From the IMG/VR virus record IMGVR_UViG_3300025161_000004, positions 1 to 64,000 of that record: DNA of 64,000 nucleotides. One strand, given 5' to 3'. Shown in pieces: positions 6,725 through 64,000 of the stretch. Position 1 is the stretch's first letter, and every line of letters begins with the position of its first letter. The notes beneath the pieces were generated by a model. It saw only the letters and a program-made list of their open reading frames with translations, had not been told where the DNA came from and searched no databases. A program made the position numbers and the translations under genes.

Positions 6725-7058
6725 TTCAATAAATTCTTATTGTGATAATTTAATTTATTTATGTATTAATTTATGATATTCATAATTAATACATTCACCC
6801 TCTAAAACGAATTTGTCTATGTAATTATAATACACAATATCGTGACCATTCCAATTACTCACGTCATAGATGAAATATGTTCTACATAGCATATTATCAA
6901 TCTGATAATTCCTTATAAAAGTATTCAATACTGGATATTGAGTTATGTTGTTATTATAGGTAGCCATTTATGAACGTAAATATAAATATTAATTTTGAAT
7001 ATTAAAAAATACTTAAATTCATTTGGAATATTAATTTTTTTTATATATTTACTACTTT

Positions 7059-7594
7059 ATGAAAAAAATTTTATTACTAAAACCATCTGATTACGAAATT
7101 GAAATATGTAAACTTTTTTCGAATAATTGTGTAAAATCTAATAAAAATGAATATTATAGAAGAAATCAACAAAATCTTAGTAAATTAATCGATGATATTT
7201 ATTTGGGTAAAATTGCTGAAATATTAGTATATAATCATCTGAAGACTAATGGTGTCAATGTTACACCAGTTGATTTTATGATTTATGATAAAAAATATAA
7301 ATCATATGATGCTGATTTATTAATAATAAAAAAAATGTAGTGAACTTTCTACATGTTAAAGGCTGTGCTGAGAATGATAATTTTCCAAATAGTTGGGTTT
7401 TTCAGCCCAATGATCCATTACTAAAAAACCCAAACCCCAATGATTATCTGGCATTAGTTGTGTTCCCTAAAAACTATGAAAAAAATGCCTATTGTTATTT
7501 CATAAACCCCAAAAAAAAGAACTTGATTTATAGAGATCCAATAAATCCTAAAATTAAAAAAAAGGTTATTTACGAATCAGATTTAATCAATTAA
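7059..7594 (+). pseudogene. PD-(D/E)xK-like nuclease split by a frameshift at an A8 tract (7328-7335)
   Basis: ORF 7059-7340 carries GKIAE and DADL, and ORF 7340-7594 carries HVK. One extra A joins them as DADLLIIKKNVVNFLHVK. Confidence 0.6.
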
Positions 7595-8053
7595 CTCAAA
7601 CTCTGTAATGAAGGAATAATGTTTATCATATGCATAACCACGTAAAACGTGTTTAATACCCCTATATTCCGTTTCTTGTCCTGAATTGAATGATAATCTA
7701 TTTTTAAACCAAAAATATTTAAAACCTTCTCTATTAATAAAATCTTGCCATCCTTTGGGGTTGAAAGCAATTAGTTTACAATTAATATTTGAACAGGAGC
7801 AGTCAATACAAACCTTAATTGGTCTTGTATCAAATTTAATTACTTGCACCCATGCAGGAGATAATTTTATACCTTTAGTTGTGTCAAGTTTAATTTCTCC
7901 CGTAAACAAATTTCTGGATACGCTTACATGATGTGTATCATTATAATGAATAAAAAACATCCAAAACAATAATAGTATAGCAAAACCAGTAGCTATTTTT
8001 TTAGTTGCCGGTCGCTGTACTGTCAGTTTTAATATCGTAAGCATGTGACTCAT
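7583..8053 (-). CDS. membrane-anchored SPFH/band-7-like protein (paralog of the neighbouring gene)
   Basis: TM helix followed by FTGEI, DTRP and FNPKG, all shared with 8001-8477. Confidence 0.6.
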   Translation of the reverse strand: MSHMLTILKLTVQRPATKKIATGFAILLLFWMFFIHYNDTHHVSVSRNLFTGEIKLDTTKGIKLSPAWVQVIKFDTRPIKVCIDCSCSNINCKLIAFNPKGWQDFINREGFKYFWFKNRLSFNSGQETEYRGIKHVLRGYAYDKHYSFITEFELID

Positions 8054-52070: not shown

Positions 52071-52799
52071 TTAGAAGTCTAAACTAAACAAAATCGTTCT
52101 AAACTTGGTGGAATCCTTCTGTACAGGATAATTGAATTTACCTACAGCTAAAAGCTCATTATTATCGTTAAATAAACCAACTTCGCTAATGTATACACTT
52201 GAGACACCATCCCATGTAGGATTGGTTGTGGAATTATATTCCCCCAATGGTAATTGGATTGCAATGTCTGTAGTATAAACTGTAGCTCCAATATCAGTTT
52301 TAACATTACCAAAAAAGAATACTTCTTCACCAAAACCCAATTTATTGGTATCACCAGATAGTGATGAGGGAATATTTAAATAATCCAAATTATAAATTGG
52401 TGATGTATTAATTTGTGCAGATGTTATTTTAAAAACAGTTCTTTCTAATGAATTTTTTGTGATAGCAGCACCTACTGTATGATCAACTAATTGATTAGTA
52501 ACATCGATTTTTTTCCAGAATTGAGATGGTGCTGTTACAGTACTACCAGTACCATCAACAACTTGCACTATGGCATTTATCTTTGTAGCAGTCCACCCAG
52601 TTCCACTAGTACTATCCATATCATTTAAAAATGGAAATGAGTTCACTGGAAAGAAAAAATTCAAATCTTTACCATTTAAAGTATCAGTTTCTAGTTTCTG
52701 AATATAATTACAATGTAAAGATTCGTTTAGTCCTAAACTAGTTCCACCAGAAAATGGTGCTCCCTCAAAATTATACGTTAAAAATACTGTTTTAGCCAT
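52071..52799 (-). CDS. baseplate/tail structural protein
   Basis: C-terminal YISEVGLFND..ELLAVGK...PVQK, typical of tail-collar/baseplate domains. Confidence 0.7.
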   Translation of the reverse strand: MAKTVFLTYNFEGAPFSGGTSLGLNESLHCNYIQKLETDTLNGKDLNFFFPVNSFPFLNDMDSTSGTGWTATKINAIVQVVDGTGSTVTAPSQFWKKIDVTNQLVDHTVGAAITKNSLERTVFKITSAQINTSPIYNLDYLNIPSSLSGDTNKLGFGEEVFFFGNVKTDIGATVYTTDIAIQLPLGEYNSTTNPTWDGVSSVYISEVGLFNDNNELLAVGKFNYPVQKDSTKFRTILFSLDF

Positions 52800-52820: not shown

Positions 52821-54059
52821 TTAAATTAGTGGTGTCCTTTGTGCCTTAATATCCCAAAAATGATTAGGATACACTAATGAAGTATTACCAGCAAAATTCC
52901 AAGTATCACCTGCATCAGTAGTAACCAATGTTTTTGTTAAACCATCAAAACTAAATAATGGTATTATACCATGTTGATTATCAAAAAAATCCATCACCTT
53001 ACCTTTGTAGATTGAAACCGATATAAAACCATTACCTGATGTATTAATATTGGTAGTTGTCCATGAAATACCACCATTTATAGATTTAGCTATCTTATTA
53101 ATAGTATTAGCACCGTTTGTACCTGCAATAATAACAATATTCTCAGATAACGCTTTAACTGCTGAAACTATCATATCTGAAGGAATTGTTACAATGCTCC
53201 ATGATGTTCCACCATTAATTGTTTTATATAGAAAAGTATCACCCACAACATAACCAATATTATTAAAGAATGATATATCAAGATACGATCTATATATAGG
53301 CATTACTGTTGGTGCTGTTATATTTGACCAAGTTAAACCACCATTAATGGTTTTAGCAATAACAGCACCACCACCAATAGCTGGGAACGTATTTATTGTA
53401 TAACCAGTATTAGCATTAACAAATTCAAATTTAGACATTGTCATATAAACACCTTTAGGAATTGGGCTATATAACAAGCCACCATTAATACTTCTATAAA
53501 GATATGTATCTGTTATTGGTGAACCTATTATTGATGTTGTTTCATTTATAGCAAAAATGGTGTTGTTATTTGCTTCTGCTATGAATGATATTGATGACGA
53601 TATGTTCGTCCATGTACTACCTCCATCTATCGTTTTATATAGTGTTCCGTTATTTCCAAGAACATATCCAACATTATTAACAAATGAGCTAGAAATTAAT
53701 GTGCGTGATGGTAATGTGGGTGCGGATAATACATTATTCCATGTACTACCGCCATTATTTGTCTTGTCTATCTTAGATGAAGCACCAACAATATAGTATG
53801 TTTTAGGTGCTATTGTTGTTGTCATGGCAGTTGTGGTTGTTGGTAACGCTGCCACATTTACTGGATACGTTACAGTTCTATTAGTATTATCACTAACAAC
53901 AATAAAATAATTACCAGAATTAACATTAGTGAATTCTGTTAATCCAGATGCGCTTAAATTAACAGTCTGTACAATATCACCATCGACAGTTGATTCTCTT
54001 AAATCTGCAATAAATGGTGGTTTGTTCCCTCTTATTTTAAATCGTATTATCGATGACAT
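52821..54059 (-). CDS. virion accessory protein: Ig-like domain, Thr-rich linker and BNR/Asp-box beta-propeller
   Basis: Repeated (K/S)TxxGGxTW motifs and a PTTTTAMTTT linker. Confidence 0.75.
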   Translation of the reverse strand: MSSIIRFKIRGNKPPFIADLRESTVDGDIVQTVNLSASGLTEFTNVNSGNYFIVVSDNTNRTVTYPVNVAALPTTTTAMTTTIAPKTYYIVGASSKIDKTNNGGSTWNNVLSAPTLPSRTLISSSFVNNVGYVLGNNGTLYKTIDGGSTWTNISSSISFIAEANNNTIFAINETTSIIGSPITDTYLYRSINGGLLYSPIPKGVYMTMSKFEFVNANTGYTINTFPAIGGGAVIAKTINGGLTWSNITAPTVMPIYRSYLDISFFNNIGYVVGDTFLYKTINGGTSWSIVTIPSDMIVSAVKALSENIVIIAGTNGANTINKIAKSINGGISWTTTNINTSGNGFISVSIYKGKVMDFFDNQHGIIPLFSFDGLTKTLVTTDAGDTWNFAGNTSLVYPNHFWDIKAQRTPLI

Positions 54060-54063
54060 TATA

Positions 54064-55614
54064 TCACGAAATTACTTTTATCACTGGTTCTGTCTGACAT
54101 TCAGGTGTACCAGTATCTATAACTGTTATTTGATATGTATCGGCAGATAATCCAGTAAATACATTACTTTCTTGTATGATATTTACTGAACCACTTGTTA
54201 ATTTATAGAACAGCGAGCCAATATTACCTGTAACACCATTTACTATTATAGTGTTACCACTAACAATAACTTGATCATCATCAATTTCAATACTACATGT
54301 TGGACATAACGTAAAGTTAAATCCTGCGATAGGCTCTGGTAAAGTCCAATTTCTATTGGATTTATATGTCATTGCGAATAACAATTCCTGATCTTCTATA
54401 ACAAAAATTTTTAAATCATTAAAAACTTTGCCTACAACATTACCATCCTGATCAACCAAATTATGATAGACAGTATTTAAATTTGGTAAAATATCTCTCG
54501 ATGATGCATCCGATGTTAATGTTAGACCAATATTACCATCGGTTCTTTTATGCCACATTATTGTTGGTAATTCTAAAACTGGTGTTGATTCATATAATAA
54601 CTCACCATATTGATTTGATGGTGAATTATTAGTATAATGTATAATACCAATCTTCTTTATTTCTGGATTTAATTGCTGAATATACTGTATAAACCCACCA
54701 AAAGCACTGCTATAGTACTGTGAAATATTCCTATTCCCAACTTGTACACCAGCAATTTCTTCTGTAAACACTATACTCATATTCCATACAGGAACATCAA
54801 CAGTAGAACAATTACAGTTCTCAAGAAAAGTCAATACACTTTCATCTACAAAATCAGTAATATATGGCTTACCATAATAATTCTGAATCGAATCTCCAGA
54901 TACTAATCTGTTATTGCTATTTGGGTAAATAAATACACTTGAATATATTGGTGATCCTACATAATTATTAAAGTTCGGTAGATTTCTATCTACCTTTATT
55001 AATAGATTATTGTTGGCAAGTGTCCCACTTATAATATCTTCAATTTTATACCATAATGTTGCAACATTTTCAACTTTAAAATTAACAGTACCAGCACTTA
55101 TATTGGGATTAGCCCATTTAACTAAAATATAATCACCAATTTGTGGCTCATTAATATTTGCCACATAATTTGGTGATTTAATTAATGTCATATAATACCC
55201 ACCATTAATAGTACTAATATCAACCATAGCATCAGGTTGCTTAACGATAGTAAAATCATTCTTAAATGTAAAAGTGCTACCTGAACTATTAAAGAAACCT
55301 CTCTCAGTTGCAGTGTTTACAATAACACTTGTTACTGATGGTACACTATTTAATGGTGTATATATTGTATCTCCAGATTCACTGAATTCATTTCTTTTAA
55401 TAAAATGAATAAAATTTGGGTTAGCATCTTTGGGTCTTAAAATATTGGCAAAAAATGGATTAAAATTAATACTATTGTAAAAGCTATAATCTATCTCACT
55501 ATCCCCAATAGCCCATTTTGTAAAATTAAGTCTACCTTCAGCCAATGCTTTTCTACCTGCATTGGTTAGTTTTATATTAATGATTGTTGGATTGTTTTTT
55601 AATATAAACGACAT
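54064..55614 (-). CDS. baseplate/tail structural protein
   Basis: KLTNAGRKALAEG...WAIGDSEIDY N-terminus, typical of tail-collar domains. Confidence 0.72.
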   Translation of the reverse strand: MSFILKNNPTIINIKLTNAGRKALAEGRLNFTKWAIGDSEIDYSFYNSINFNPFFANILRPKDANPNFIHFIKRNEFSESGDTIYTPLNSVPSVTSVIVNTATERGFFNSSGSTFTFKNDFTIVKQPDAMVDISTINGGYYMTLIKSPNYVANINEPQIGDYILVKWANPNISAGTVNFKVENVATLWYKIEDIISGTLANNNLLIKVDRNLPNFNNYVGSPIYSSVFIYPNSNNRLVSGDSIQNYYGKPYITDFVDESVLTFLENCNCSTVDVPVWNMSIVFTEEIAGVQVGNRNISQYYSSAFGGFIQYIQQLNPEIKKIGIIHYTNNSPSNQYGELLYESTPVLELPTIMWHKRTDGNIGLTLTSDASSRDILPNLNTVYHNLVDQDGNVVGKVFNDLKIFVIEDQELLFAMTYKSNRNWTLPEPIAGFNFTLCPTCSIEIDDDQVIVSGNTIIVNGVTGNIGSLFYKLTSGSVNIIQESNVFTGLSADTYQITVIDTGTPECQTEPVIKVIS

Positions 55615-55649
55615 CGTACAATATTTTAACTATAAATACAATCTAAAAT

Positions 55650-56579
55650 TTATTTATAAAAATCTTTTAGGTGTGATAATTCATTAATTATTTGAACATA
55701 ATTATAATTGCATGTACCCCCTTTTATTTTAGAAAAATCCTCACCAAATGGCATCTTGTTGGTGTATTTTCCTTTGTAGAATTCACCTTTGCTATCGGAA
55801 ACTACTCCAGCGTTATGATAGATTTTCACTCTTTTCCAGTCATCAATACCCCAATTACACCATGCAAATTCCATATCTCTATGTACTACAGTTTCAATGC
55901 CATATAACCATAAATTCCATAGTAATGCCCACATATCTGCAGTCCATGCCTGTATGGGATGATTTGGACTATAAATATTTGATGTTTTTTTCATTAATTT
56001 ATATAAGGTAATCGAATCCTTTTCGCACTTTTCGAATAGTTCATAGTTTAATGAATTTTTTGGTAAAATATATTGTGCACCACCACTATTCATCTCATTA
56101 TTTTTAACCATATCAATATCGATACCAACAACATCACACATTAATTGTAATAATTCTGGTGATTTACTTTCAATATACTTTGCACCAATATAAGATATAG
56201 TATCTGAAACATATGCAGTATTTGGTTTTTCAATTATTGATTCCCAATCAAATTTTTTAGTGAAAACAATGTCGGAATCATGATAAAATATATCATGTCC
56301 ATCAATTAAATGATAGTGGTTCTTATATAAATCATATAAACCATAAAATCTCAGTGATGGTATATATGTTGTTTTATCATTTCTTTTATCTTTAATTAAT
56401 ATAACTCTATTACTATTTTTTATAATATATTTTTTCACATTTTTACTGACTTTACCAGTAATTAAAAACATAACATATGAATCACTTATATTATATCCAC
56501 ACTTTATAAATTGGTGGTCAAACACTTCGTGTTGCCATATAAAATATTCTGTTGCTGGTTGTATTGATAAAAATTTCAT
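55650..56579 (-). CDS. GT-A fold glycosyltransferase
   Basis: DxD motif FYHDSDIVF, GGAQY, WTADMWA and HNAG. Confidence 0.7.
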   Translation of the reverse strand: MKFLSIQPATEYFIWQHEVFDHQFIKCGYNISDSYVMFLITGKVSKNVKKYIIKNSNRVILIKDKRNDKTTYIPSLRFYGLYDLYKNHYHLIDGHDIFYHDSDIVFTKKFDWESIIEKPNTAYVSDTISYIGAKYIESKSPELLQLMCDVVGIDIDMVKNNEMNSGGAQYILPKNSLNYELFEKCEKDSITLYKLMKKTSNIYSPNHPIQAWTADMWALLWNLWLYGIETVVHRDMEFAWCNWGIDDWKRVKIYHNAGVVSDSKGEFYKGKYTNKMPFGEDFSKIKGGTCNYNYVQIINELSHLKDFYK

Positions 56580-56666
56580 TTACTTAAAAAATTTAAATAC
56601 ATGTAAGCAATACACTAGTATCATATGGTGTATAATTTATTGTTGTATAGTTCAAGATTCTATATC

Positions 56667-56927
56667 TCATATGTCTGGTGGTTCTGTTGTTGTAGGCTCT
56701 TCAGTTGTTGTAGGTTCAACACAGTTAACTATAACTGGCTGATTGTATACATTACCAAAACCATCAGTTACTTTAATGTAATAGCTCCCGTTTTCAACAC
56801 CATAAAAAAAATATGAACCAATTGTTGAAGTAGTTCCACTCTGAACTATTTCATTTAGAACATTAAATAATTCATATGTATAATTAGGTATTCCTTTAAT
56901 GATTGTAAATGATATTGTAGCTGCCAT
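56667..56927 (-). CDS. small Ig-like virion protein with a PTTTE tail
   Basis: G.PNYTY and Y.IKVTD..G, C-terminal EPTTTEEPTTTEPP. Confidence 0.65.
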   Translation of the reverse strand: MAATISFTIIKGIPNYTYELFNVLNEIVQSGTTSTIGSYFFYGVENGSYYIKVTDGFGNVYNQPVIVNCVEPTTTEEPTTTEPPDI

Positions 56928-56944
56928 AATTTAACTATTTTTTA

Positions 56945-57571
56945 TTAAATACAAGGTACATCCTCACAATTAGAGTAACTAGTAACTCCAATAATAGAAT
57001 GTGTGGGTGACGAATATGTATCTTTTGCTATTATTAGACAAACCTCACCACTATACAGTGGATAGTACCCGCCTATAACTCTCGGTACACTTCCATCAAC
57101 AATACCAAATCCGTATGGTATACAAGATCCACAAAAATACAATTCAACACTATAATTCAATAATGGTGGTTCTGTTGTTGTAGGTGCTTCTGTAGTTGTT
57201 GTTGGTGCTTCAGTTGTTGTAGGTGGTTCTGTTGTTGTTGGTGCTTCAGTTGTTGTAGGTTCAACAATAGGATCACAAGTCACATTCACATTTATAATTT
57301 GAACAGGTTCGATACAAGTAGGATCAAAAAATGTTGAATCAAAAATTAATTGATTTTTTATGTCTAAATCAATAGTACCAATAAAATCTATAAAATCATT
57401 AAGTCTTTGAAGATATTCACTATCACTTAACTCAGATAATTGTATCGGAGTTAATGCCGAATAAGTATCAAATGAATCTAATAAGTTATACTCAGTAGTA
57501 GCTGTTACTGTAGTAATACCACTTGGTCTTATCTCAACACATTGTATAATATATCTTCTTTTATTATTCAT
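56945..57571 (-). CDS. virion protein with a mucin-like PTTTE(A/P) repeat linker
   Basis: EPTTTEAPTTTEPPTTTEAPTTTTEAPTTTEPP. Confidence 0.7.
   Translation of the reverse strand: MNNKRRYIIQCVEIRPSGITTVTATTEYNLLDSFDTYSALTPIQLSELSDSEYLQRLNDFIDFIGTIDLDIKNQLIFDSTFFDPTCIEPVQIINVNVTCDPIVEPTTTEAPTTTEPPTTTEAPTTTTEAPTTTEPPLLNYSVELYFCGSCIPYGFGIVDGSVPRVIGGYYPLYSGEVCLIIAKDTYSSPTHSIIGVTSYSNCEDVPCI
57168..57265 (-). repeat. coding 18-bp tandem repeat (PTTTE[AP])
   Basis: About 5 imperfect copies of ccaacaacaacagaacca-like units. Confidence 0.8.
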
Positions 57572-57582
57572 TTCTTATAAAA

Positions 57583-60500
57583 TTAGCTTGAAGTTATAAC
57601 TTCAACATCCTCAATAAATAGTATTGGTTGACTCACACAAACACTCGCATCTGCCCAGCTATAAATTGTTTTTGCTTGTTTAGTTTTAAATTCGCTACCA
57701 TCATCACCTAACCATTCTAATGATGGATCAAAATTTACACCTCTCTTGTACGTAAATTTTTGTCTAGTAAATGATGTATTTCTAATTAAAGTACCACCCT
57801 TTCTTAAAATTACAGTTGCAGGTAAAAGATCTGTAATGAATCTTTCAAAGAAAGTACTGAATTTTGCTATAAATGGAAATACATTGCTAAATGTATAACC
57901 ATTACTATGATAAAAATTATTTTCGGGTAAAAAACTAACTTTTAAATATTCTTCATATATTTTTAATACCGTAGGATAAAATCCACCATTATTATCTGTT
58001 ATAATTTTTCTTGTTTTAGCATTTATTAATTTTCTTGTAACCAATTCAAGATATTCCAAGAAACTTAATTCGCTTACATTTGGGAATATTAAATTTGATG
58101 GTAAAAATGAAGATTGTGTTCCTTCACCAACAACATAATATACGCCAATAACATCACCATAGTTTAGTGAAGCTGGTAAAAATATTTGGTATTTATTACC
58201 CGAATTAAGTGTAAAATCAGTCCCATTTTGAAGTGTTATACCATTAATTGTGACTTTTATTGATGCAATATCAATTGCTTCATAATTCATATTATATATG
58301 AACTTATTTATACCTGCGTTAAATGATAACTTATTAGATGAAAATGAATCAACTCTATGTACTTCAAACTTTTTATTTAAACCTTCATTATTAAGTTGTT
58401 CTATATATGATATCATTACAGTTGGATTTGACTGTAAATAAGTAACTAACGATGCGTTTTGAACTACAATTTTATCTTTTGTCGGTGCAATTATATAATC
58501 ACCAGTAAACAATGAAGTGCTTTTTGTTAGAGAAATACCATTTATAGTCAATTGGATATCACCACTATCACTGAGTGTGTAATTAGGTGGTAATGGTATC
58601 TCAACACCACTAGGTAATGCTGTGATAGTTGTAACGATATATTGAATTGAAGAATAATCACCACTCAAACCATTATATCTATCATGTAGATATGTTAATG
58701 TAATAACATCTTTTGAGCCATTACTATGCTTTCTCGCATATTCATTAATCAATTGTACAGTTGTGTTACTTAATTGTACATAATCAACACCCTTTTCTAA
58801 TGTTATACCATTAAAATTAACCTGAATATCTCCCAACGCTGTTTCGCCATTAATAACTGTAAACGTATTAGCTGACTCGCCATAAGTGAATGGGATATTA
58901 ATATATAAGTATGGTTTAGTAACTCCAGTAGTACTAATTGGATAATTAGTTAACTTATTATAAGTATATACATCGTATTCAATACCTCTTGCAGTATCAA
59001 GAGTGGCATCAATTTCTTTTGTATTAATAATTAATTTACTATCACGCTGAAAGTATGCAGGTGATGAATAATGTTTTCTCTCAACAAAACCTGCTTCTTC
59101 CCATGATTTTTTATTATCTACTATTCTATTAACTGAAAATCCAACTCTTCTGAATAAATTAATATATTCCTGACCACCATCAGTATCACCACTGATTTGG
59201 AAAAAAAAATCATTATTTTCTTTCGGAGCTATAGGATAACCCTGACTATTATATGGTAATGATGGTGCACCGATATCTTCTAGTGTTAAATTAACCCTAT
59301 TAGGATTTATTCTACCATCAACAGTATAAACATATTCTGTTATGTCAACAAATGGTTCAGGAATACCAATAAGTCTAAGCATTGATTTTAATGCTGCTCT
59401 AGTACCTTTTGATTTCCAATAATAATTTGTATTAATTATTATTCTTCTCCATAATTCAATATCAATTTCATATGGTAATCTAATTTGATTCTCTTCGGTT
59501 TCAAATTCTGAAAAAAATGCATTTTCTAAGTCTTCATCCGAAACTAAATTAACTGTATTCCACCCTAATGTTTTAGCTAGATTTTTAACTAATGTATCTG
59601 ATAAATTATTTTTCTTATTATAGGTTACAGTATTTGCATATGCAATTGCATCGATATATTGTCTGATATTATCAAATTCTCTACCATATATTCTAAGTAA
59701 TTTAGACATTTTCATCTCATCAGTCTGATCATATACTTTCAGAGATGTTGTTGTTAACAATCTATAAACTAAATCTGTTTTGAAACTATCATATAACTCA
59801 CCTAAATTCATTAAACTAACCAAATATTGTGAATATTGTGAGCTATCAATATCTATATTATACTGATCAAATGTTGTCCATATAAACGATCTCTCAGTAA
59901 AGATTGTATTACCATCATCAAGCAATACTGGTTCTTTAAATTCAGTAATAAAACCACTATTATCATCAGTTCTTCTTGATAATAAATGTTTCTGTAGTGG
60001 CTCTAATTTGGAATAGAATAAATTATATTGTCTCGGATTAGGTTTTATGTGATAATTAATGCTTGCAGTACTTGCAGTATTACCACTAATTTCAGGGAAG
60101 GGATTACCATTAACTTTGAATCTTAAAATTGGATCTTGTATAGTGTCACCAGTATATCCTAAAATATAATGTTTGTTATTATCAGGGTCACTACCTTTCC
60201 ATATAACATAATTCTGATATGATAAATTTAAATTACGTATCTCAGAATTATCTGGTGTTGCAAAATTATTTCTTGCAGTTACTATACCGAATTTATTATC
60301 AATATATTGTTTCGGTACTTCAAATGTGCTTATATTCGTTACTGGATCATAAATAAAATTAGCTATAGTGAAATTACCGTTTACAGTAATATTTTTATAG
60401 GCAAATAAACTCGCAGGGAATTTTTTTATAATTTCTTGAACAGCTACTCTTAGTATTTCTTTAGTTGATCCAAATTTAGCATAGGATTTTAAATCCGATT

Positions 60501-60759
60501 TGTCAAGATTTAAAACTACATTCGATGTTAATGATACAATTTGATTAGATTCATTTTCAGTTAACTTAAGATTTTCAAGAGTTATTGGTGTAACAAAAGA
60601 AGTGATTTTATTTTCATATTTGGTTATTTTTCTACCAGTAAAATTTGACTGAACAGAAAAAGCACCAAGACTAAAAATAGTTTGTGACGCATCATTAGTG
60701 AAATTACCACCAATTAAATCTGCATTTTGTCTTTTATTAATAACCTTTATCTTTGCCAT
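57583..60759 (-). CDS. baseplate/tail structural protein (baseplate I/gp7-like region)
   Basis: LAKTLGW and ELWRRI..N..Y.WKSKGTR.AL..MLRLIG, repeated NGITL..G.D[YF] domains. Confidence 0.75.
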   Translation of the reverse strand: MAKIKVINKRQNADLIGGNFTNDASQTIFSLGAFSVQSNFTGRKITKYENKITSFVTPITLENLKLTENESNQIVSLTSNVVLNLDKSDLKSYAKFGSTKEILRVAVQEIIKKFPASLFAYKNITVNGNFTIANFIYDPVTNISTFEVPKQYIDNKFGIVTARNNFATPDNSEIRNLNLSYQNYVIWKGSDPDNNKHYILGYTGDTIQDPILRFKVNGNPFPEISGNTASTASINYHIKPNPRQYNLFYSKLEPLQKHLLSRRTDDNSGFITEFKEPVLLDDGNTIFTERSFIWTTFDQYNIDIDSSQYSQYLVSLMNLGELYDSFKTDLVYRLLTTTSLKVYDQTDEMKMSKLLRIYGREFDNIRQYIDAIAYANTVTYNKKNNLSDTLVKNLAKTLGWNTVNLVSDEDLENAFFSEFETEENQIRLPYEIDIELWRRIIINTNYYWKSKGTRAALKSMLRLIGIPEPFVDITEYVYTVDGRINPNRVNLTLEDIGAPSLPYNSQGYPIAPKENNDFFFQISGDTDGGQEYINLFRRVGFSVNRIVDNKKSWEEAGFVERKHYSSPAYFQRDSKLIINTKEIDATLDTARGIEYDVYTYNKLTNYPISTTGVTKPYLYINIPFTYGESANTFTVINGETALGDIQVNFNGITLEKGVDYVQLSNTTVQLINEYARKHSNGSKDVITLTYLHDRYNGLSGDYSSIQYIVTTITALPSGVEIPLPPNYTLSDSGDIQLTINGISLTKSTSLFTGDYIIAPTKDKIVVQNASLVTYLQSNPTVMISYIEQLNNEGLNKKFEVHRVDSFSSNKLSFNAGINKFIYNMNYEAIDIASIKVTINGITLQNGTDFTLNSGNKYQIFLPASLNYGDVIGVYYVVGEGTQSSFLPSNLIFPNVSELSFLEYLELVTRKLINAKTRKIITDNNGGFYPTVLKIYEEYLKVSFLPENNFYHSNGYTFSNVFPFIAKFSTFFERFITDLLPATVILRKGGTLIRNTSFTRQKFTYKRGVNFDPSLEWLGDDGSEFKTKQAKTIYSWADASVCVSQPILFIEDVEVITSS

Positions 60760-62327: not shown

Positions 62328-64000
62328 TTAAACTCTTAAATCAGTTCTTTTTCTTAAGTATACTTTTATGTCTCTTTCAGGATATTTAATTTCAAACATT
62401 GAATCTGGTGTACTATAAATTGTATTATTAATCAATTTAATTTCTCCAGTAGTTTCATTTGCAAACTCCTGTTCAATAGGATTTAATGAATATCCATTTC
62501 CAACTTTATTATAAATTTTCATTGAAATTATATTTATAACACCATCTATATCATTAATTGAATTTTGTAATGGTGCTAAAAAAATGTCCTCATTCATTTT
62601 TTTATTTTTAATATTGAAATAATTAGTGATGGTACTAATAATATTATTTGCTATTTGACTATCATTTCTTTCTTCAACATAAACATCAATATCGATAGCT
62701 ATATTGAATATTCTACCATCCCTTACCTCAATATAATCATTGACCATTCTATATTCACTTAACCACTCAGTAATATTATTTTTTAAAAGTGTATTGCTAG
62801 TATTTGTTAATTTACCATTAGAGTCTATACCTAATATAACAATTACTACTTTATTATTTTCTTTAAATGCATTTGATCTAAATGGTGAACCATAACGCCC
62901 TGGCATTCTGTTCACCATAGTTAGGTAATCATTTATTGTTACGGCTCTATATTGGCTTGAGTAGTTATATGATATAAGATTTCTTATTTCTTCTATGGAT
63001 AATCCATCATTACCTCCAATAGCTGGAATTGGGTTTGTCACCCTTAAACTTCTTTGTACACTATTATTTAAATCTTGACGAGCACCATTAACGCTCATTC
63101 TGAACTGACCCATTTGTGTAAGAACGTTACTACCTAAATTAGAATCACTCCCACCACCAACACGATATCTAACATATAACGTCCCTCTTTTTAGTTTCTC
63201 GCCTAATGAAGTGTTTTCTAAAAAATTCTGTAAGAATATATCATTACTAATACCAACTTTTGCAAAACCCTCTTTTAAAAGATCGAAATCAGAATTACCA
63301 CTACCAAATGTTAGTACACACAACCCATTTGCAGTATATTCCTTAATAAATTTTCTAGTCACATCAACCCATTTGCCGGCTTTAATTCCTGTACTTCCTG
63401 TAGTTGCATTTGTATTACCAGCATCCACATCCTCTAAAAATATTCTTTGTTGTGCTAAATAATCTACTTCATAATAACGAATATCTCGATTATAGAATAA
63501 TTCATCAGGTGGATTTGAACCAGCATTTTGATTTTGAACCAAAATAACACTATCTATGGATATGACATTATTATCTGGTAATGTTAATTCATAAAATGGC
63601 ACAATTTCTTGATCTGTAATAACCTTACGATAAATCTTAGTACTACCATTAATTACTATTTCTCTTTTAGTTATAAGATACGATGTGATAATACCATTCG
63701 AATCGAGAACAGGTATCTGACTTCTATTTGGATACCCTAAATTACTTACTGGTGAGGCAAAATCAATCACATCTTCTGTCTCAAAAACTTTTCCTCCACC
63801 AACTACTTGTGATTGTGGAAATAATACTGGATAATATGACGCATCTGGTTTATCACCCTTAACTGGTATCTGTACCGTAAAGTCAACTACTGTCACTGAT
63901 GGTCTTTTATTGGGTATATTAAATCCTAAGTTTTTAGCGATATTTAGGATTGATGCTCTTTGCTGTGCGTATTGTAATTGAGTTTCCTGAAACGCTCTAT
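62328..64000 (-). CDS. baseplate wedge subunit (gp6/baseplate J-like), 5'-truncated by the window edge
   Basis: The frame stays open to the window end (RAFQETQLQYAQQRASILNIAKNLG). Motifs LTFG.G, YRVGGG..SN, AIGG.D and RAVT.NDY. Confidence 0.85.
   Translation of the reverse strand, partial: RAFQETQLQYAQQRASILNIAKNLGFNIPNKRPSVTVVDFTVQIPVKGDKPDASYYPVLFPQSQVVGGGKVFETEDVIDFASPVSNLGYPNRSQIPVLDSNGIITSYLITKREIVINGSTKIYRKVITDQEIVPFYELTLPDNNVISIDSVILVQNQNAGSNPPDELFYNRDIRYYEVDYLAQQRIFLEDVDAGNTNATTGSTGIKAGKWVDVTRKFIKEYTANGLCVLTFGSGNSDFDLLKEGFAKVGISNDIFLQNFLENTSLGEKLKRGTLYVRYRVGGGSDSNLGSNVLTQMGQFRMSVNGARQDLNNSVQRSLRVTNPIPAIGGNDGLSIEEIRNLISYNYSSQYRAVTINDYLTMVNRMPGRYGSPFRSNAFKENNKVVIVILGIDSNGKLTNTSNTLLKNNITEWLSEYRMVNDYIEVRDGRIFNIAIDIDVYVEERNDSQIANNIISTITNYFNIKNKKMNEDIFLAPLQNSINDIDGVINIISMKIYNKVGNGYSLNPIEQEFANETTGEIKLINNTIYSTPDSMFEIKYPERDIKVYLRKRTDLRV

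What the first reader, a model, noticed from the sequence alone, without database searches (positions are those of the whole stretch)
52821..57571. Glycosyltransferase embedded among mucin-like tail proteins: possible virion O-glycosylation
Seen in sequence: a DxD glycosyltransferase (55650-56579; HDSD, WTADMW) interrupts the tail module. It directly follows two genes with PTTTE repeats (56667-56927, 56945-57571) and lies near a beta-propeller with a PTTTTAMTTT linker. The WxxDMW segment resembles the WxxEMY motif of plant peptidyl Hyp/Ser O-glycosyltransferases (recalled, not searched). Inference: the enzyme glycosylates Thr-rich linkers on virion decoration proteins.
Basis: inference. Interest (0 to 1): 0.6.

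Follow-up and report, generated by a model that had tools for sequence, protein, structure and literature searches.

The report
Phage enzyme paired with poly-threonine virion proteins
A jumbo phage carries an uncharacterised sugar-transferring enzyme that, across hundreds of unrelated phages, sits directly after capsid, tail or baseplate genes carrying threonine runs, which suggests that many phages sugar-coat their particles.

Summary
ORF 55650-56579(-) is a confidently modelled GT-A glycosyltransferase (pLDDT 97.6) with an invariant DxD. It has no Pfam, NCBIfam or PDB sequence match and belongs to phrog_4417 (function unknown). The two genes upstream and a beta-propeller gene two genes downstream hold the genome's only Pro-flanked Thr tracts (P=3e-5). 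They lie in one operon with gp25- and gp6-like baseplate genes.

In 80 viral contigs the gene just upstream of the GT carries a Thr tract in 72%, against 6% at other positions (p=3e-41). This holds after de-duplication and in 80 bacterial-genome loci (p=2e-20). In Bacillota prophages the tracts are C-terminal tails on the major head and major tail proteins. Five phages with homologous tail proteins but no GT lack the tail.

Solved structures place the fold nearest retaining GT8-like enzymes. Predicted structures place it nearer plant/algal HPAT (GT95; TM 0.75), but the HPAT model does not match, so membership is not shown.

Best reading (confidence about 0.68): a cytoplasmic enzyme O-glycosylates Thr tracts of virion proteins. 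It resembles mycobacteriophage virion glycosylation but uses an unrelated enzyme. Glycoproteomics is needed.

The parts
55650..56579 (-). Glycosyltransferase, 309 aa. GT-A fold, member of phrog_4417, soluble (no transmembrane or signal segment).
   Evidence: phrog_4417 E 4e-67. No Pfam, NCBIfam or PDB sequence hit. AF2 pLDDT 97.6. Glycogenin Z 14.8, LgtC 14.3, UGGT 14.2, GlyE 13.2. HPAT-type predicted models TM 0.75. Maximum hydropathy 1.0.
56271..56279 (-). DxD motif (D101-S-D103), the presumed metal and nucleotide-sugar binding site.
   Evidence: Both Asp are invariant in 50 homologs. The motif follows a beta strand (residues 97-99) in the model.
55929..55946 (-). WTADMW block inside the conserved PIQxWTADMWAxLWNLW helix. 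H255 (55815-55817), in the YHNAGV block, is a candidate third metal ligand (inference).
   Evidence: Q210, M216, W221 and H255 are invariant; W212 and W217 are at least 90% conserved.
56667..56927 (-). Gene -1: an 86-aa small beta-sandwich protein ending in a C-terminal Thr tract (56676-56717). Proposed acceptor.
   Evidence: Sequence. Weak Ig-like hits: SdrD_B E 1.5e-4, CarboxypepD_reg, SpaA; T9SS-CTD-like E 2e-3. 6 Thr in a 10-residue window.
56945..57571 (-). Gene -2: a 208-aa two-domain protein with a 33-residue (PTTTE/A)n linker (57164-57262) and a Cys-rich C-terminal domain. Proposed acceptor.
   Evidence: Sequence. The ortholog in L216 keeps a Thr tract at the same position, but as a run of about 20 Thr.
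52821..54059 (-). Gene +2: a 412-aa protein with an Ig-like N-domain, a Thr linker (53805-53843) and a BNR beta-propeller. Proposed acceptor.
   Evidence: PF14870 E 1e-16, PF15902 E 4e-9. The ortholog in L217 has AAA-T11-LSP at the same linker position.
54064..55614 (-). Gene +1: a 516-aa protein of unknown function, syntenic in the closest relatives, with no Thr tract.
   Evidence: No family hit. Present next to the GT in L216, L217 and a third relative.
52071..52799 (-). Last gene of the operon, 242 aa, function unknown.
   Evidence: A 242-aa gene is conserved at the same position in L217.
57583..60759 (-). A 1058-aa protein between the baseplate wedge genes and the Thr-tract genes. Likely a baseplate or fibre component (inference from position only).
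   Evidence: No phage or family match. A syntenic 1059-aa gene is present in L216.
62328..64000 (-). gp6-like baseplate wedge subunit. It runs on to 64178, beyond the window, and is preceded by a gp25-like gene at G000 64196-64636.
   Evidence: phrog_219 E 1e-29. PF04965 E 1.3e-11, above the curated cut-off.

Best explanation
ORF 55650-56579 encodes a soluble, metal-dependent (DxD) GT-A glycosyltransferase of an uncharacterised phage family (phrog_4417). The family is structurally related to the retaining GT8-like enzymes and to plant/algal hydroxyproline O-arabinosyltransferases.

Proposed mechanism. During late infection the enzyme acts in the host cytoplasm on newly made phage structural proteins. 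It transfers a sugar from a nucleotide sugar onto the hydroxyl groups of Thr in extended Pro/Thr tracts. In this phage the acceptors are the inter-domain linkers and the C-terminal tail of three baseplate-module proteins encoded at positions -2, -1 and +2. In many other phages they are C-terminal poly-Thr tails on the major capsid and tail-tube subunits. The result would be short, stiff, protease-resistant, hydrophilic glycopeptide segments on the virion surface. A GT-B enzyme encoded 9 kb away in the same module may extend the glycan.

Shown: the fold, the conserved catalytic-type motifs, the operon context and the family-wide association with Thr-tract virion genes.

Inferred: that the acceptor is Thr in those tracts, the retaining chemistry, the donor sugar, and the biological benefit.
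For: 1. Enzyme. GT-A fold at pLDDT 97.6. Best solved matches are glycogenin, LgtC, UGGT, WbbM, AgtA, LARGE1 and GlyE at Z 13-15; several of these act on proteins or on protein-bound glycans. Invariant DxD and His. No transmembrane segment. TM 0.75 to HPAT-family models, which are peptide O-glycosyltransferases acting on Pro-rich tracts (PMC4908140).

2. Position-specific association. In 80 IMG/VR loci, gene -1 has a Thr tract in 57/79 against 53/825 at other positions (OR 38, p 3e-41). After clustering at 60% identity it is 13/25 against 22/333 (p 2e-8), and 19/26 clusters have a tract within 3 genes.

3. Independent replicate. In 80 bacterial-genome loci it is 38/79 against 61/911 (p 2e-20), and 37/50 for single-domain enzymes.

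4. Six of six isolate phages examined show the pattern: phiFL1A, Semele, SA2, phiCTP1, PLE3 and MA9V-3.

5. The partners are virion proteins. They include major head protein phrog_10 (E 1e-47), major tail proteins phrog_88, phrog_6686 and phrog_1407, and a crAss muzzle-like protein.

6. Joint presence and absence. Five phages with 50-60% identical tail proteins but no GT lack the poly-Thr tail, and the positive control was 5/5.

7. Converse test. In 5/63 poly-Thr10 loci the GT is present, each time immediately downstream on the same strand.

8. Orthologous tracts keep their position and Thr content but not their sequence or length.

9. Within this genome the tracts cluster at the GT (P 3.4e-5).
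Against: - No glycan, mass shift or enzyme activity has been observed for any member.
- The window's tracts are short and interrupted (three or four Thr per repeat), unlike the runs of 8-20 Thr typical elsewhere.
- About a quarter of viral loci have no tract at -1, and 29 long Bacteroidota fusion homologs have none, so the family is not tied to Thr tracts throughout.
- About 90% of viral poly-Thr genes have no member of this family beside them.
- Co-folding of the GT with the 86-aa protein gave no verdict.
- The window's acceptor proteins have no recognisable structural-protein homology.
- Gene adjacency can also reflect co-transfer of a cassette rather than an enzyme-substrate relation.
Confidence: 0.68

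Rival explanations
1. The enzyme modifies virion proteins, but not as proposed. One version: the Thr tract is only a flexible docking or spacer element and the sugar goes elsewhere. Another version: the enzyme transfers a sugar-1-phosphate (Stealth/GlcNAc-1-phosphotransferase-like phosphoglycosylation) rather than a plain sugar.
For: GlcNAc-1-phosphotransferase and CpsY-type Stealth enzymes appear among the fold matches (Z 9.2-9.8). Two of 50 members give weak Stealth_CR2 hits (E 0.02). The association data show linkage to tract-bearing genes, not to a particular residue.
Against: GT8-like retaining glycosyltransferases score much higher (Z 13-15), and HPAT models align over the full length. 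Thr content is the only feature of the tracts conserved between orthologs. Many acceptors are bare C-terminal Thr runs with nothing else nearby to modify.
Confidence: 0.12
2. The enzyme acts on a host envelope polymer (teichoic acid, LPS, capsule or the phage receptor), for example to block superinfection. It sits in the structural module only because that is a tolerated insertion site for accessory genes.
For: Phage-encoded glycosyltransferases that alter host surface glycans are well known (reviewed in the passage quoted in PMC12619734). Several fold relatives (LgtC, WbbM) build LPS. Long fusion homologs in Bacteroidota chromosomes have no Thr-tract neighbour.
Against: This does not explain why gene -1 in particular carries a Thr tract in 72% and 74% of loci across hosts as different as Bacteroidota and Bacillota. 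It also does not explain why the tail and the GT are present or absent together. The enzyme has no membrane segment. It occurs in lytic and temperate phages alike.
Confidence: 0.07
3. The protein is not a working transferase. It would be a GT-fold chaperone or assembly factor that binds poly-Thr segments of structural proteins.
For: It is placed between the major tail protein and the tail chaperones in siphophages. No activity has been shown.
Against: The DxD, a His and about 20 other positions, including an NSGG block, are invariant or nearly so across more than 500 relatives. That is the pattern of a conserved active site.
Confidence: 0.05
4. The enzyme glycosylates hydroxymethylated bases in phage DNA to evade restriction.
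For: Phage GT-A enzymes that hypermodify DNA exist and also resemble capsid-glycosylating GTs in fold (bioRxiv 10.1101/2023.12.21.572611).
Against: Those enzymes cluster with C5-methyltransferase, 5mYOX or ThyS genes. This 247 kb record has no ThyA-family or C5-methyltransferase gene, and both searches had working controls. The neighbours here and in relatives are structural genes.
Confidence: 0.03

Closest known systems
Mycobacteriophage virion glycosylation (Che8, Corndog, Myrna; Freeman et al. 2023, as described in PMC12619734, PMC12363180 and PMC11256854)
   Same: Phage-encoded glycosyltransferases modify the phage's own structural proteins in the cytoplasm. Glycans are reported at the C-termini of capsid and tail-tube subunits. 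Those are the proteins that carry poly-Thr tails next to this GT family in Bacillota prophages.
   Different: The enzyme family is unrelated at sequence level: no Mycobacterium phage is among the 75 phage records with a homolog. The mycobacteriophage GT genes lie near the 3' end of the genome (PMC11256854), whereas this GT is embedded directly after its presumed substrate gene. The hosts differ (Bacteroidota and Bacillota). In this window the tracts are inter-domain linkers of baseplate-module proteins rather than capsid or tube tails. Glycosylation is proven there and only inferred here.
Plant/algal hydroxyproline O-arabinosyltransferases (HPAT, CAZy GT95, Pfam PF23452) and the related Ser alpha-galactosyltransferase SGT1 (GT96)
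   Same: These are peptide O-glycosyltransferases acting on hydroxyl groups in extended Pro-rich tracts (extensins). Predicted structures align over the whole protein (TM 0.75, 286 residues). Close viral sister clusters partly carry the HPAT Pfam domain. GT95 is described as related to GT8 (PMC4908140), is predicted to be GT-A-like (PMC8476585) and is related to GT96 (PMC8012813).
   Different: The PF23452 model does not match this protein or its relatives. HPATs are Golgi type II membrane proteins (PMC8012813), whereas this protein is soluble. The acceptor would be Thr rather than Hyp or Ser. The donor is unknown.
Retaining GT8-like GT-A enzymes (glycogenin, LgtC, GlyE, LARGE1 xylosyltransferase domain; also UGGT/GT24 and AgtA/GT77)
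   Same: These are the best solved-structure matches (Z 13-15, 210-248 residues aligned). They share the DxD and a likely distal His ligand. GlyE, glycogenin, UGGT and AgtA act on proteins or on protein-bound glycans.
   Different: About 10% identity. No hit to PF01501 or to any PDB sequence, even with a family profile. Foldseek TM by query is only about 0.5.
PBCV-1 A64R and other giant-virus capsid glycosyltransferases
   Same: A virus-encoded GT-A enzyme that glycosylates the major capsid protein in the cytoplasm. It is a structural match (2p6w, Z 11.5).
   Different: It ranks lower than the GT8-like enzymes, comes from a eukaryotic virus, and has no poly-Thr acceptor signature.

Membership tests
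GT-A fold glycosyltransferase superfamily | A single Rossmann-like alpha/beta/alpha domain with a DxD motif after a central beta strand. | tested here: met
   AF2 model pLDDT 97.6. 82 PDB representatives at Z >= 8, nearly all GT-A enzymes. D101 and D103 invariant.
phrog_4417 (phage protein family, function unknown) | Full-length match to the family profile. | tested here: met
   E 4.2e-67, residues 1-301 on profile positions 1-291 of 293.
CAZy GT8 / Pfam PF01501 | Sequence match to the family model. | tested here: not met
   No Pfam hit at E <= 0.1 for the protein. PF01501 is absent from the hits of 50 relatives at E <= 1. A family profile finds no PDB GT8 chain.
CAZy GT8 / Pfam PF01501 | Closest three-dimensional similarity among solved structures. 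| tested here: met
   Glycogenin Z 14.8, LgtC 14.3, GlyE 13.2, a GT8 protein from Anaerococcus 13.2.
CAZy GT95 / Pfam PF23452 (HPAT) | Match to the HPAT model above its gathering score (23.9 bits). | tested here: not met
   No hit for the protein. 1 of 50 relatives at E 0.35. 0 of 5 phage records, but that search had no positive control.
CAZy GT95 / Pfam PF23452 (HPAT) | Whole-domain structural similarity to HPAT proteins. | tested here: met
   TM 0.75-0.77 by query over residues 1-309 to Chlorophyta clusters in which 99-100% of members carry PF23452. Both sides are predicted models.
CAZy GT95 / Pfam PF23452 (HPAT) | Type II membrane anchor (Golgi enzyme). | tested here: not met
   The highest 19-residue hydropathy is 1.0, and the model is globular from residue 1.
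CAZy GT96 (SGT1) and the recalled WxxEMY motif | Sequence or motif match to peptidyl-Ser alpha-galactosyltransferase. | not testable with these tools
   No GT96 model or sequence was available. Only the literature statement that GT95 and GT96 are related is available (PMC8012813).
Phage virion glycosylation system (mycobacteriophage type) | Glycan covalently attached to virion proteins. | not testable with these tools
   This needs glycoproteomics. No published data were found for any carrier of this family (10 literature searches).
Phage virion glycosylation system (mycobacteriophage type) | Homology of the transferase to Che8/Corndog/Myrna enzymes. | tested here: not met
   75 phage records hold a homolog and none is a Mycobacterium phage.
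Phage virion glycosylation system (mycobacteriophage type) | Acceptor segments at the C-termini of the major capsid and tail-tube subunits. | tested here: inconclusive
   Met in Bacillota prophage relatives and in phiFL1A, SA2, phiCTP1 and PLE3. In the window itself the tracts are internal linkers and the tail of an 86-aa protein in the baseplate module.
Phage DNA-hypermodifying GT-A enzymes | Clustering with C5-methyltransferase, 5mYOX or ThyS genes. | tested here: not met
   No PF00303 or PF00145 in the genome, with controls positive. PF12851 was not found, but that search had no control. The neighbours are structural genes.

The most novel reading that the evidence does not exclude
phrog_4417 would be a large, cross-phylum family of phage peptide O-glycosyltransferases, homologous to the plant/algal extensin-glycosylating HPAT (GT95) enzymes. 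It would read a genetically encoded poly-Thr 'glyco-tag'. By adding such a tag to capsid, tail-tube, baseplate or fibre proteins and carrying the GT immediately downstream, phages of Bacillota and Bacteroidota would coat their virions with mucin-like glycopeptide brushes. The carriers include Enterococcus, Staphylococcus and Lactobacillus phages. Virion glycosylation would then be common rather than a mycobacteriophage peculiarity, and the tag-plus-enzyme pair would be a portable two-gene cassette usable for glyco-engineering of phage particles.
Probability: 0.4. Interest if true: 0.85.

Novelty: new variant of a known kind. Interest (0 to 1): 0.74.

Why it matters
Phage particles are generally assumed to be unglycosylated ("Bacteriophages are not typically glycosylated", PMC11256854). 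The one documented exception, in mycobacteriophages, reportedly shields virions from antibody binding (described in PMC12363180).

If this family does what its genomic context implies, virion glycosylation extends to hundreds of phage lineages infecting Bacteroidota and Bacillota. These include isolates of Enterococcus, Staphylococcus, Lactobacillus, Lactococcus and Clostridium phages that are cultured and can be tested at once.

It would:
- assign a function to a sizeable family of unknown function;
- explain the poly-Thr tails seen here on several head and tail proteins;
- give a simple predictor (Thr tract plus GT) of glycosylated virion proteins;
- bear on phage stability, immunogenicity and surface interactions.

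The structural link to plant extensin glycosyltransferases would also be of evolutionary interest.

Tried and rejected
- Co-folding of the GT with the 86-aa Thr-tailed protein: score 0.00, no verdict. This is not evidence either way.
- Sequence searches of the PDB with the protein and with a 50-sequence profile: only chance-level hits.
- Pfam, NCBIfam and PADLOC-independent family scans of the GT and of six isolate homologs: nothing.
- HPAT model searched in five phage records: nothing, but no positive control rang.
- tblastn of the 1058-aa neighbour against phages: no match.
- Ten literature searches for glycosylated Thr-rich phage structural proteins, for this family, for DUF7164 and for GT95 in phages: no description of this family found. 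The library holds open-access papers only. Freeman et al. 2023 could not be read and is cited through papers that describe it.
- The idea that all poly-Thr genes in viruses depend on this family was rejected: only about 10% have it alongside.
- The long (500-590 aa) Bacteroidota fusion proteins were separated out as a different, probably cellular, subtype.

Not used, because the protein was no longer open: the large representative-protein search, the reads tools, the second structure job and the remaining homolog searches.

Full report
**Setting.** The window is the first 64 kb of a 246,768-bp linear IMG/VR virus record, estimated 79% complete, with about 28% G+C. It is a jumbo phage. The finding covers the distal end of a long minus-strand operon whose genes are 4-87 bp apart.

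**Observation.**
- ORF 55650-56579 (309 aa) has HDSD at residues 100-103 and WTADMW at 212-217.
- The two genes upstream in transcription carry Pro/Thr/Glu repeats. The 208-aa product of 56945-57571 has a 33-residue (PTTTE/A)n linker between two domains. The 86-aa product of 56667-56927 is a small beta-sandwich (weak SdrD_B, CarboxypepD_reg and SpaA hits) that ends in EPTTTEEPTTTEPPDI.
- Two genes downstream, the 412-aa product of 52821-54059 joins an Ig-like N-domain to a BNR/Ycf48/sortilin-type propeller (PF14870 E 1e-16) through LPTTTTAMTTTIAP.
- Among 341 called genes in the genome, only eight have at least 6 Thr in a 10-residue window. The only three Pro-flanked tracts are these three genes. 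The chance of three of the four flanking genes being hits is 3.4e-5.

**Is it a tail module?** None of the flanking proteins matched a structural family. However, the operon begins with a gp25-like gene (PF04965 E 1.3e-11, above cut-off; G000 64196-64636) and a gp6-like baseplate wedge gene (phrog_219 E 1e-29; 62328-64178). The context is therefore baseplate and distal tail. That the Thr-tract proteins are virion components is an inference from operon position.

**What the enzyme is.**
- It has no hit in Pfam, NCBIfam or PDB sequences, even with a 50-member family profile. It matches phrog_4417, of unknown function, end to end (E 4e-67).
- The word search found 594 relatives. Their alignment shows 23 invariant positions, including D101 and D103, and blocks such as NSGGAQY, PIQxWTADMWAxLWNLW and YHNAGV.
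- AlphaFold2 gave a model with pLDDT 97.6 and pTM 0.93. Foldseek and an exhaustive VIA search agree on a GT-A fold nearest the retaining GT8-like enzymes: glycogenin Z 14.8, LgtC 14.3, UGGT catalytic domain 14.2, WbbM 14.1, AgtA 13.9, LARGE1 13.7 and GlyE 13.2. PBCV-1 A64R scores 11.5.
- There is no hydrophobic segment, so it is a soluble cytoplasmic enzyme.

**The recalled plant connection.**
- The ESM Atlas, by language-model features and by structure, and a repeat search with my own model place the protein next to HPAT (PF23452, GT95). TM is 0.75-0.77 by query over the full length to green-algal clusters in which 99-100% of members carry HPAT. Eighteen of the 30 nearest named clusters are viral clusters in which about 10% of members carry that domain. 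This is closer than any solved structure (Foldseek TM by query about 0.5).
[quoted passage not shown] GT95 is predicted to be GT-A-like (PMC8476585) and is related to GT96 (PMC8012813).
- The HPAT model itself does not match. There is no hit for this protein, one hit in 50 relatives at E 0.35, and none in five phage records (without a positive control).
- I therefore treat HPAT kinship as a well-founded structural resemblance, not as shown membership. GT96 and the WxxEMY motif could not be tested.

**The acceptor: comparative evidence.** The key result came from the neighbours of homologs.

(a) Isolate phages. The family occurs in 75 phage records: Lactobacillus, Enterococcus, Staphylococcus, Lactococcus, Clostridium, Chryseobacterium and others, but none from Mycobacterium. 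In all six I examined, the gene immediately upstream carries a poly-Thr tract. The tracts are at the C-terminus of the major tail protein of phiFL1A, SA2 and phiCTP1, in a small Thr-repeat protein of Semele and PLE3, and in a 429-aa protein of Chryseobacterium phage MA9V-3.

(b) Viral contigs. In 80 IMG/VR loci (out of at least 582 with the family), gene -1 has at least 6 Thr in 10 residues in 57/79 cases. At positions -8 to +8 otherwise it is 53/825 (odds ratio 38, p 3e-41). With one representative per 60%-identity cluster it is 13/25 against 22/333 (p 2e-8), and 19/26 clusters have a tract within three genes.

(c) Bacterial and archaeal genomes. In 80 loci (124 matches in about 185,000 species genomes; Bacteroidota and Bacillota), gene -1 scores 38/79 against 61/911 (p 2e-20).
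- Splitting by length separates two types. Single-domain enzymes score 37/50 at -1. Fusions of 500-590 aa in Chitinophaga, Pedobacter, Sphingobacterium and relatives score 1/29.
- The single-domain loci also peak at -6 and -5. There the major head protein (phrog_10, E 1e-47) and a small phrog_749 protein end in poly-Thr, as does the major tail protein at -1 (phrog_88 E 3e-49, phrog_6686 E 2e-69).

(d) Partner identity in viral contigs. Where it can be named, the partner is a virion protein: three tail-tube proteins with Thr-linked extensions and one crAss muzzle-like structural protein.

(e) Natural experiment. The phiFL1A tail protein has 50-60% identical homologs in Streptococcus, Lactobacillus and Pediococcus phages. 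Five of these records lack the GT (positive control 5/5). Their tail proteins stop shortly after the conserved RPGE-x-G core with no Thr run, and the chaperone gene follows directly. phiFL1A adds a 27-residue Thr/Ser tail and the GT.

(f) Converse test. Of 63 viral loci with an in-frame run of 10 or more Thr, five hold this GT, each time immediately downstream on the same strand. That is 4 of 40 loci with enough downstream sequence.

(g) Close relatives. Contigs with 46-76% identical GTs keep the arrangement. Orthologs of the window's 208-aa and 412-aa proteins keep a Thr tract at the same linker position, but with quite different length and sequence. Examples are about 20 consecutive Thr, or AAA-T11-LSP. 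Composition is conserved rather than sequence, as expected of an O-glycosylation acceptor.

**Mechanism proposed.** A cytoplasmic, DxD-dependent GT-A enzyme transfers a sugar to Thr hydroxyls in extended Pro/Thr tracts of structural proteins before or during assembly. The transfer is probably with retention, by analogy with its fold relatives.
- In this phage the acceptors would be two inter-domain linkers and one C-terminal tail in baseplate-module proteins.
- O-glycosylation of Pro/Thr linkers is known from my own knowledge of cellulase linkers to stiffen them and protect them from proteolysis. A similar benefit is plausible here.
- For capsid and tube tails in other phages, a glycan coat like that reported for mycobacteriophages is the natural analogy (PMC12619734, PMC12363180).
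- A GT-B enzyme (phrog_7162 E 1e-36) at G000 65577-66974 could extend the glycan. Tandem paralogs of the GT-A occur in some relatives.
- The donor sugar, the linkage and the benefit are not known.

**Rivals.**
- Host-surface modification fails to explain the position-specific link to Thr-tract genes across two phyla, the joint presence and absence of tail and GT, and the lack of a membrane segment.
- DNA glycosylation is unlikely. The known DNA-modifying GT-As cluster with C5-methyltransferase, 5mYOX or ThyS genes, and this genome has no ThyA-family or C5-methyltransferase gene with controls positive.
- A non-catalytic chaperone role is hard to square with an invariant active-site-like constellation.
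- A variant chemistry (sugar-phosphate transfer) or another target residue on the same proteins remains possible.

**Limits.**
- No experiment supports glycosylation for any member.
- Gene calling and the Thr-tract criterion are my own simple rules.
- Loci within a data set are related, though de-duplication and two further data sets give the same answer.
- The association is not universal in either direction.
- The co-folding test gave no verdict.
- The search for homologous proteins could not have seen the long fusions. Those came from the Atlas and the genome scan.

**Novelty and verdict.** Virion glycosylation by phage-encoded enzymes is known for mycobacteriophages. Here the enzyme family is different and uncharacterised, the acceptor signature (poly-Thr) is explicit, the enzyme gene sits directly after its presumed substrate gene, and the hosts are different phyla. 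Ten literature searches found no description of it. I rate it a new variant of a known kind, of high interest because it is widespread and directly testable in cultured phages.

Noticed in passing
G000 65577-66974 (L088:3577-4974, minus strand; just outside the window): A second glycosyltransferase, 465 aa and GT-B/GT4-like (phrog_7162 E 1e-36; weak Glyco_transf_4 and Glyco_trans_1_4 hits). It lies two genes upstream of the gp25-like baseplate gene in the same operon and could extend the proposed glycan.
   Followed up: partly
L239, L244, L252, L254, L259-L261, L264, L282 and others (Bacillota genome loci): In prophages of halophilic Bacillaceae, Staphylococcus and Enterococcus, three structural-module proteins all end in C-terminal poly-Thr tails. 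They are the major head protein, a roughly 105-aa phrog_749 protein and the major tail protein. The GT follows the tail gene.
   Followed up: yes
L234, L236, L241, L243, L253, L256, L262, L265, L266 and others (Chitinophaga, Pedobacter, Sphingobacterium, Mucilaginibacter): Chromosomal proteins of 500-590 aa fuse this GT domain (TM 0.92) to a second GT domain (Glyco_transf_7C in the Atlas cluster). They have no Thr-tract neighbour, so they are probably a cellular subtype with another acceptor.
   Followed up: partly
L008 (genes 8 and 9) and L093:6070-6999 with 7001-7936: Tandem paralogs of the GT in two large viral contigs (363 kb and 173 kb), with Thr-tract genes on both sides.
   Followed up: partly
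G000 68263-74284 (L088:6263-12284): An RNA-repair-like cluster next to the baseplate genes. It holds a HAD_SAK_1 domain protein, a tRNA-ligase CPD-like protein and a 999-aa protein with a tRNA nucleotidyltransferase domain (phrog_2244 E 8e-67).
   Followed up: no
window 56667-56927 and 52821-54059; 54064-55614 (C-terminus): Small beta-sandwich modules with weak T9SS C-terminal-domain, SdrD_B and CarboxypepD_reg similarity recur in these proteins. The nearest isolate homolog is from a Chryseobacterium phage and the nearest genome hits are Cytophagales and Flavobacteriaceae MAGs. Together with about 28% G+C, this hints at a Bacteroidota host.
   Followed up: partly
L005:5117-5930 (Staphylococcus phage SA2): The major tail protein ends in a run of Thr. 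An overlapping ORF annotated as hypothetical encodes about 60 more residues, mostly Thr and Ser. This looks like a frameshift extension of the tail protein made almost wholly of acceptor sequence.
   Followed up: no
G000 87192-89051 and 93889-95928 (L089): Two paralogous large proteins with head-decoration or Ig-like structural domains (phrog_2647 E 1e-17 to 1e-23) lie about 30 kb from the GT. They have Thr-rich but not Pro-flanked segments.
   Followed up: no
L090 and L092 (33-kb contigs with portal and integrase genes): The closest GT relatives outside the jumbo-phage lineage (54-58% identity) sit in small, probably temperate phages. The GT-plus-Thr-tract pair therefore appears to move between very different phage types.
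   Followed up: partly
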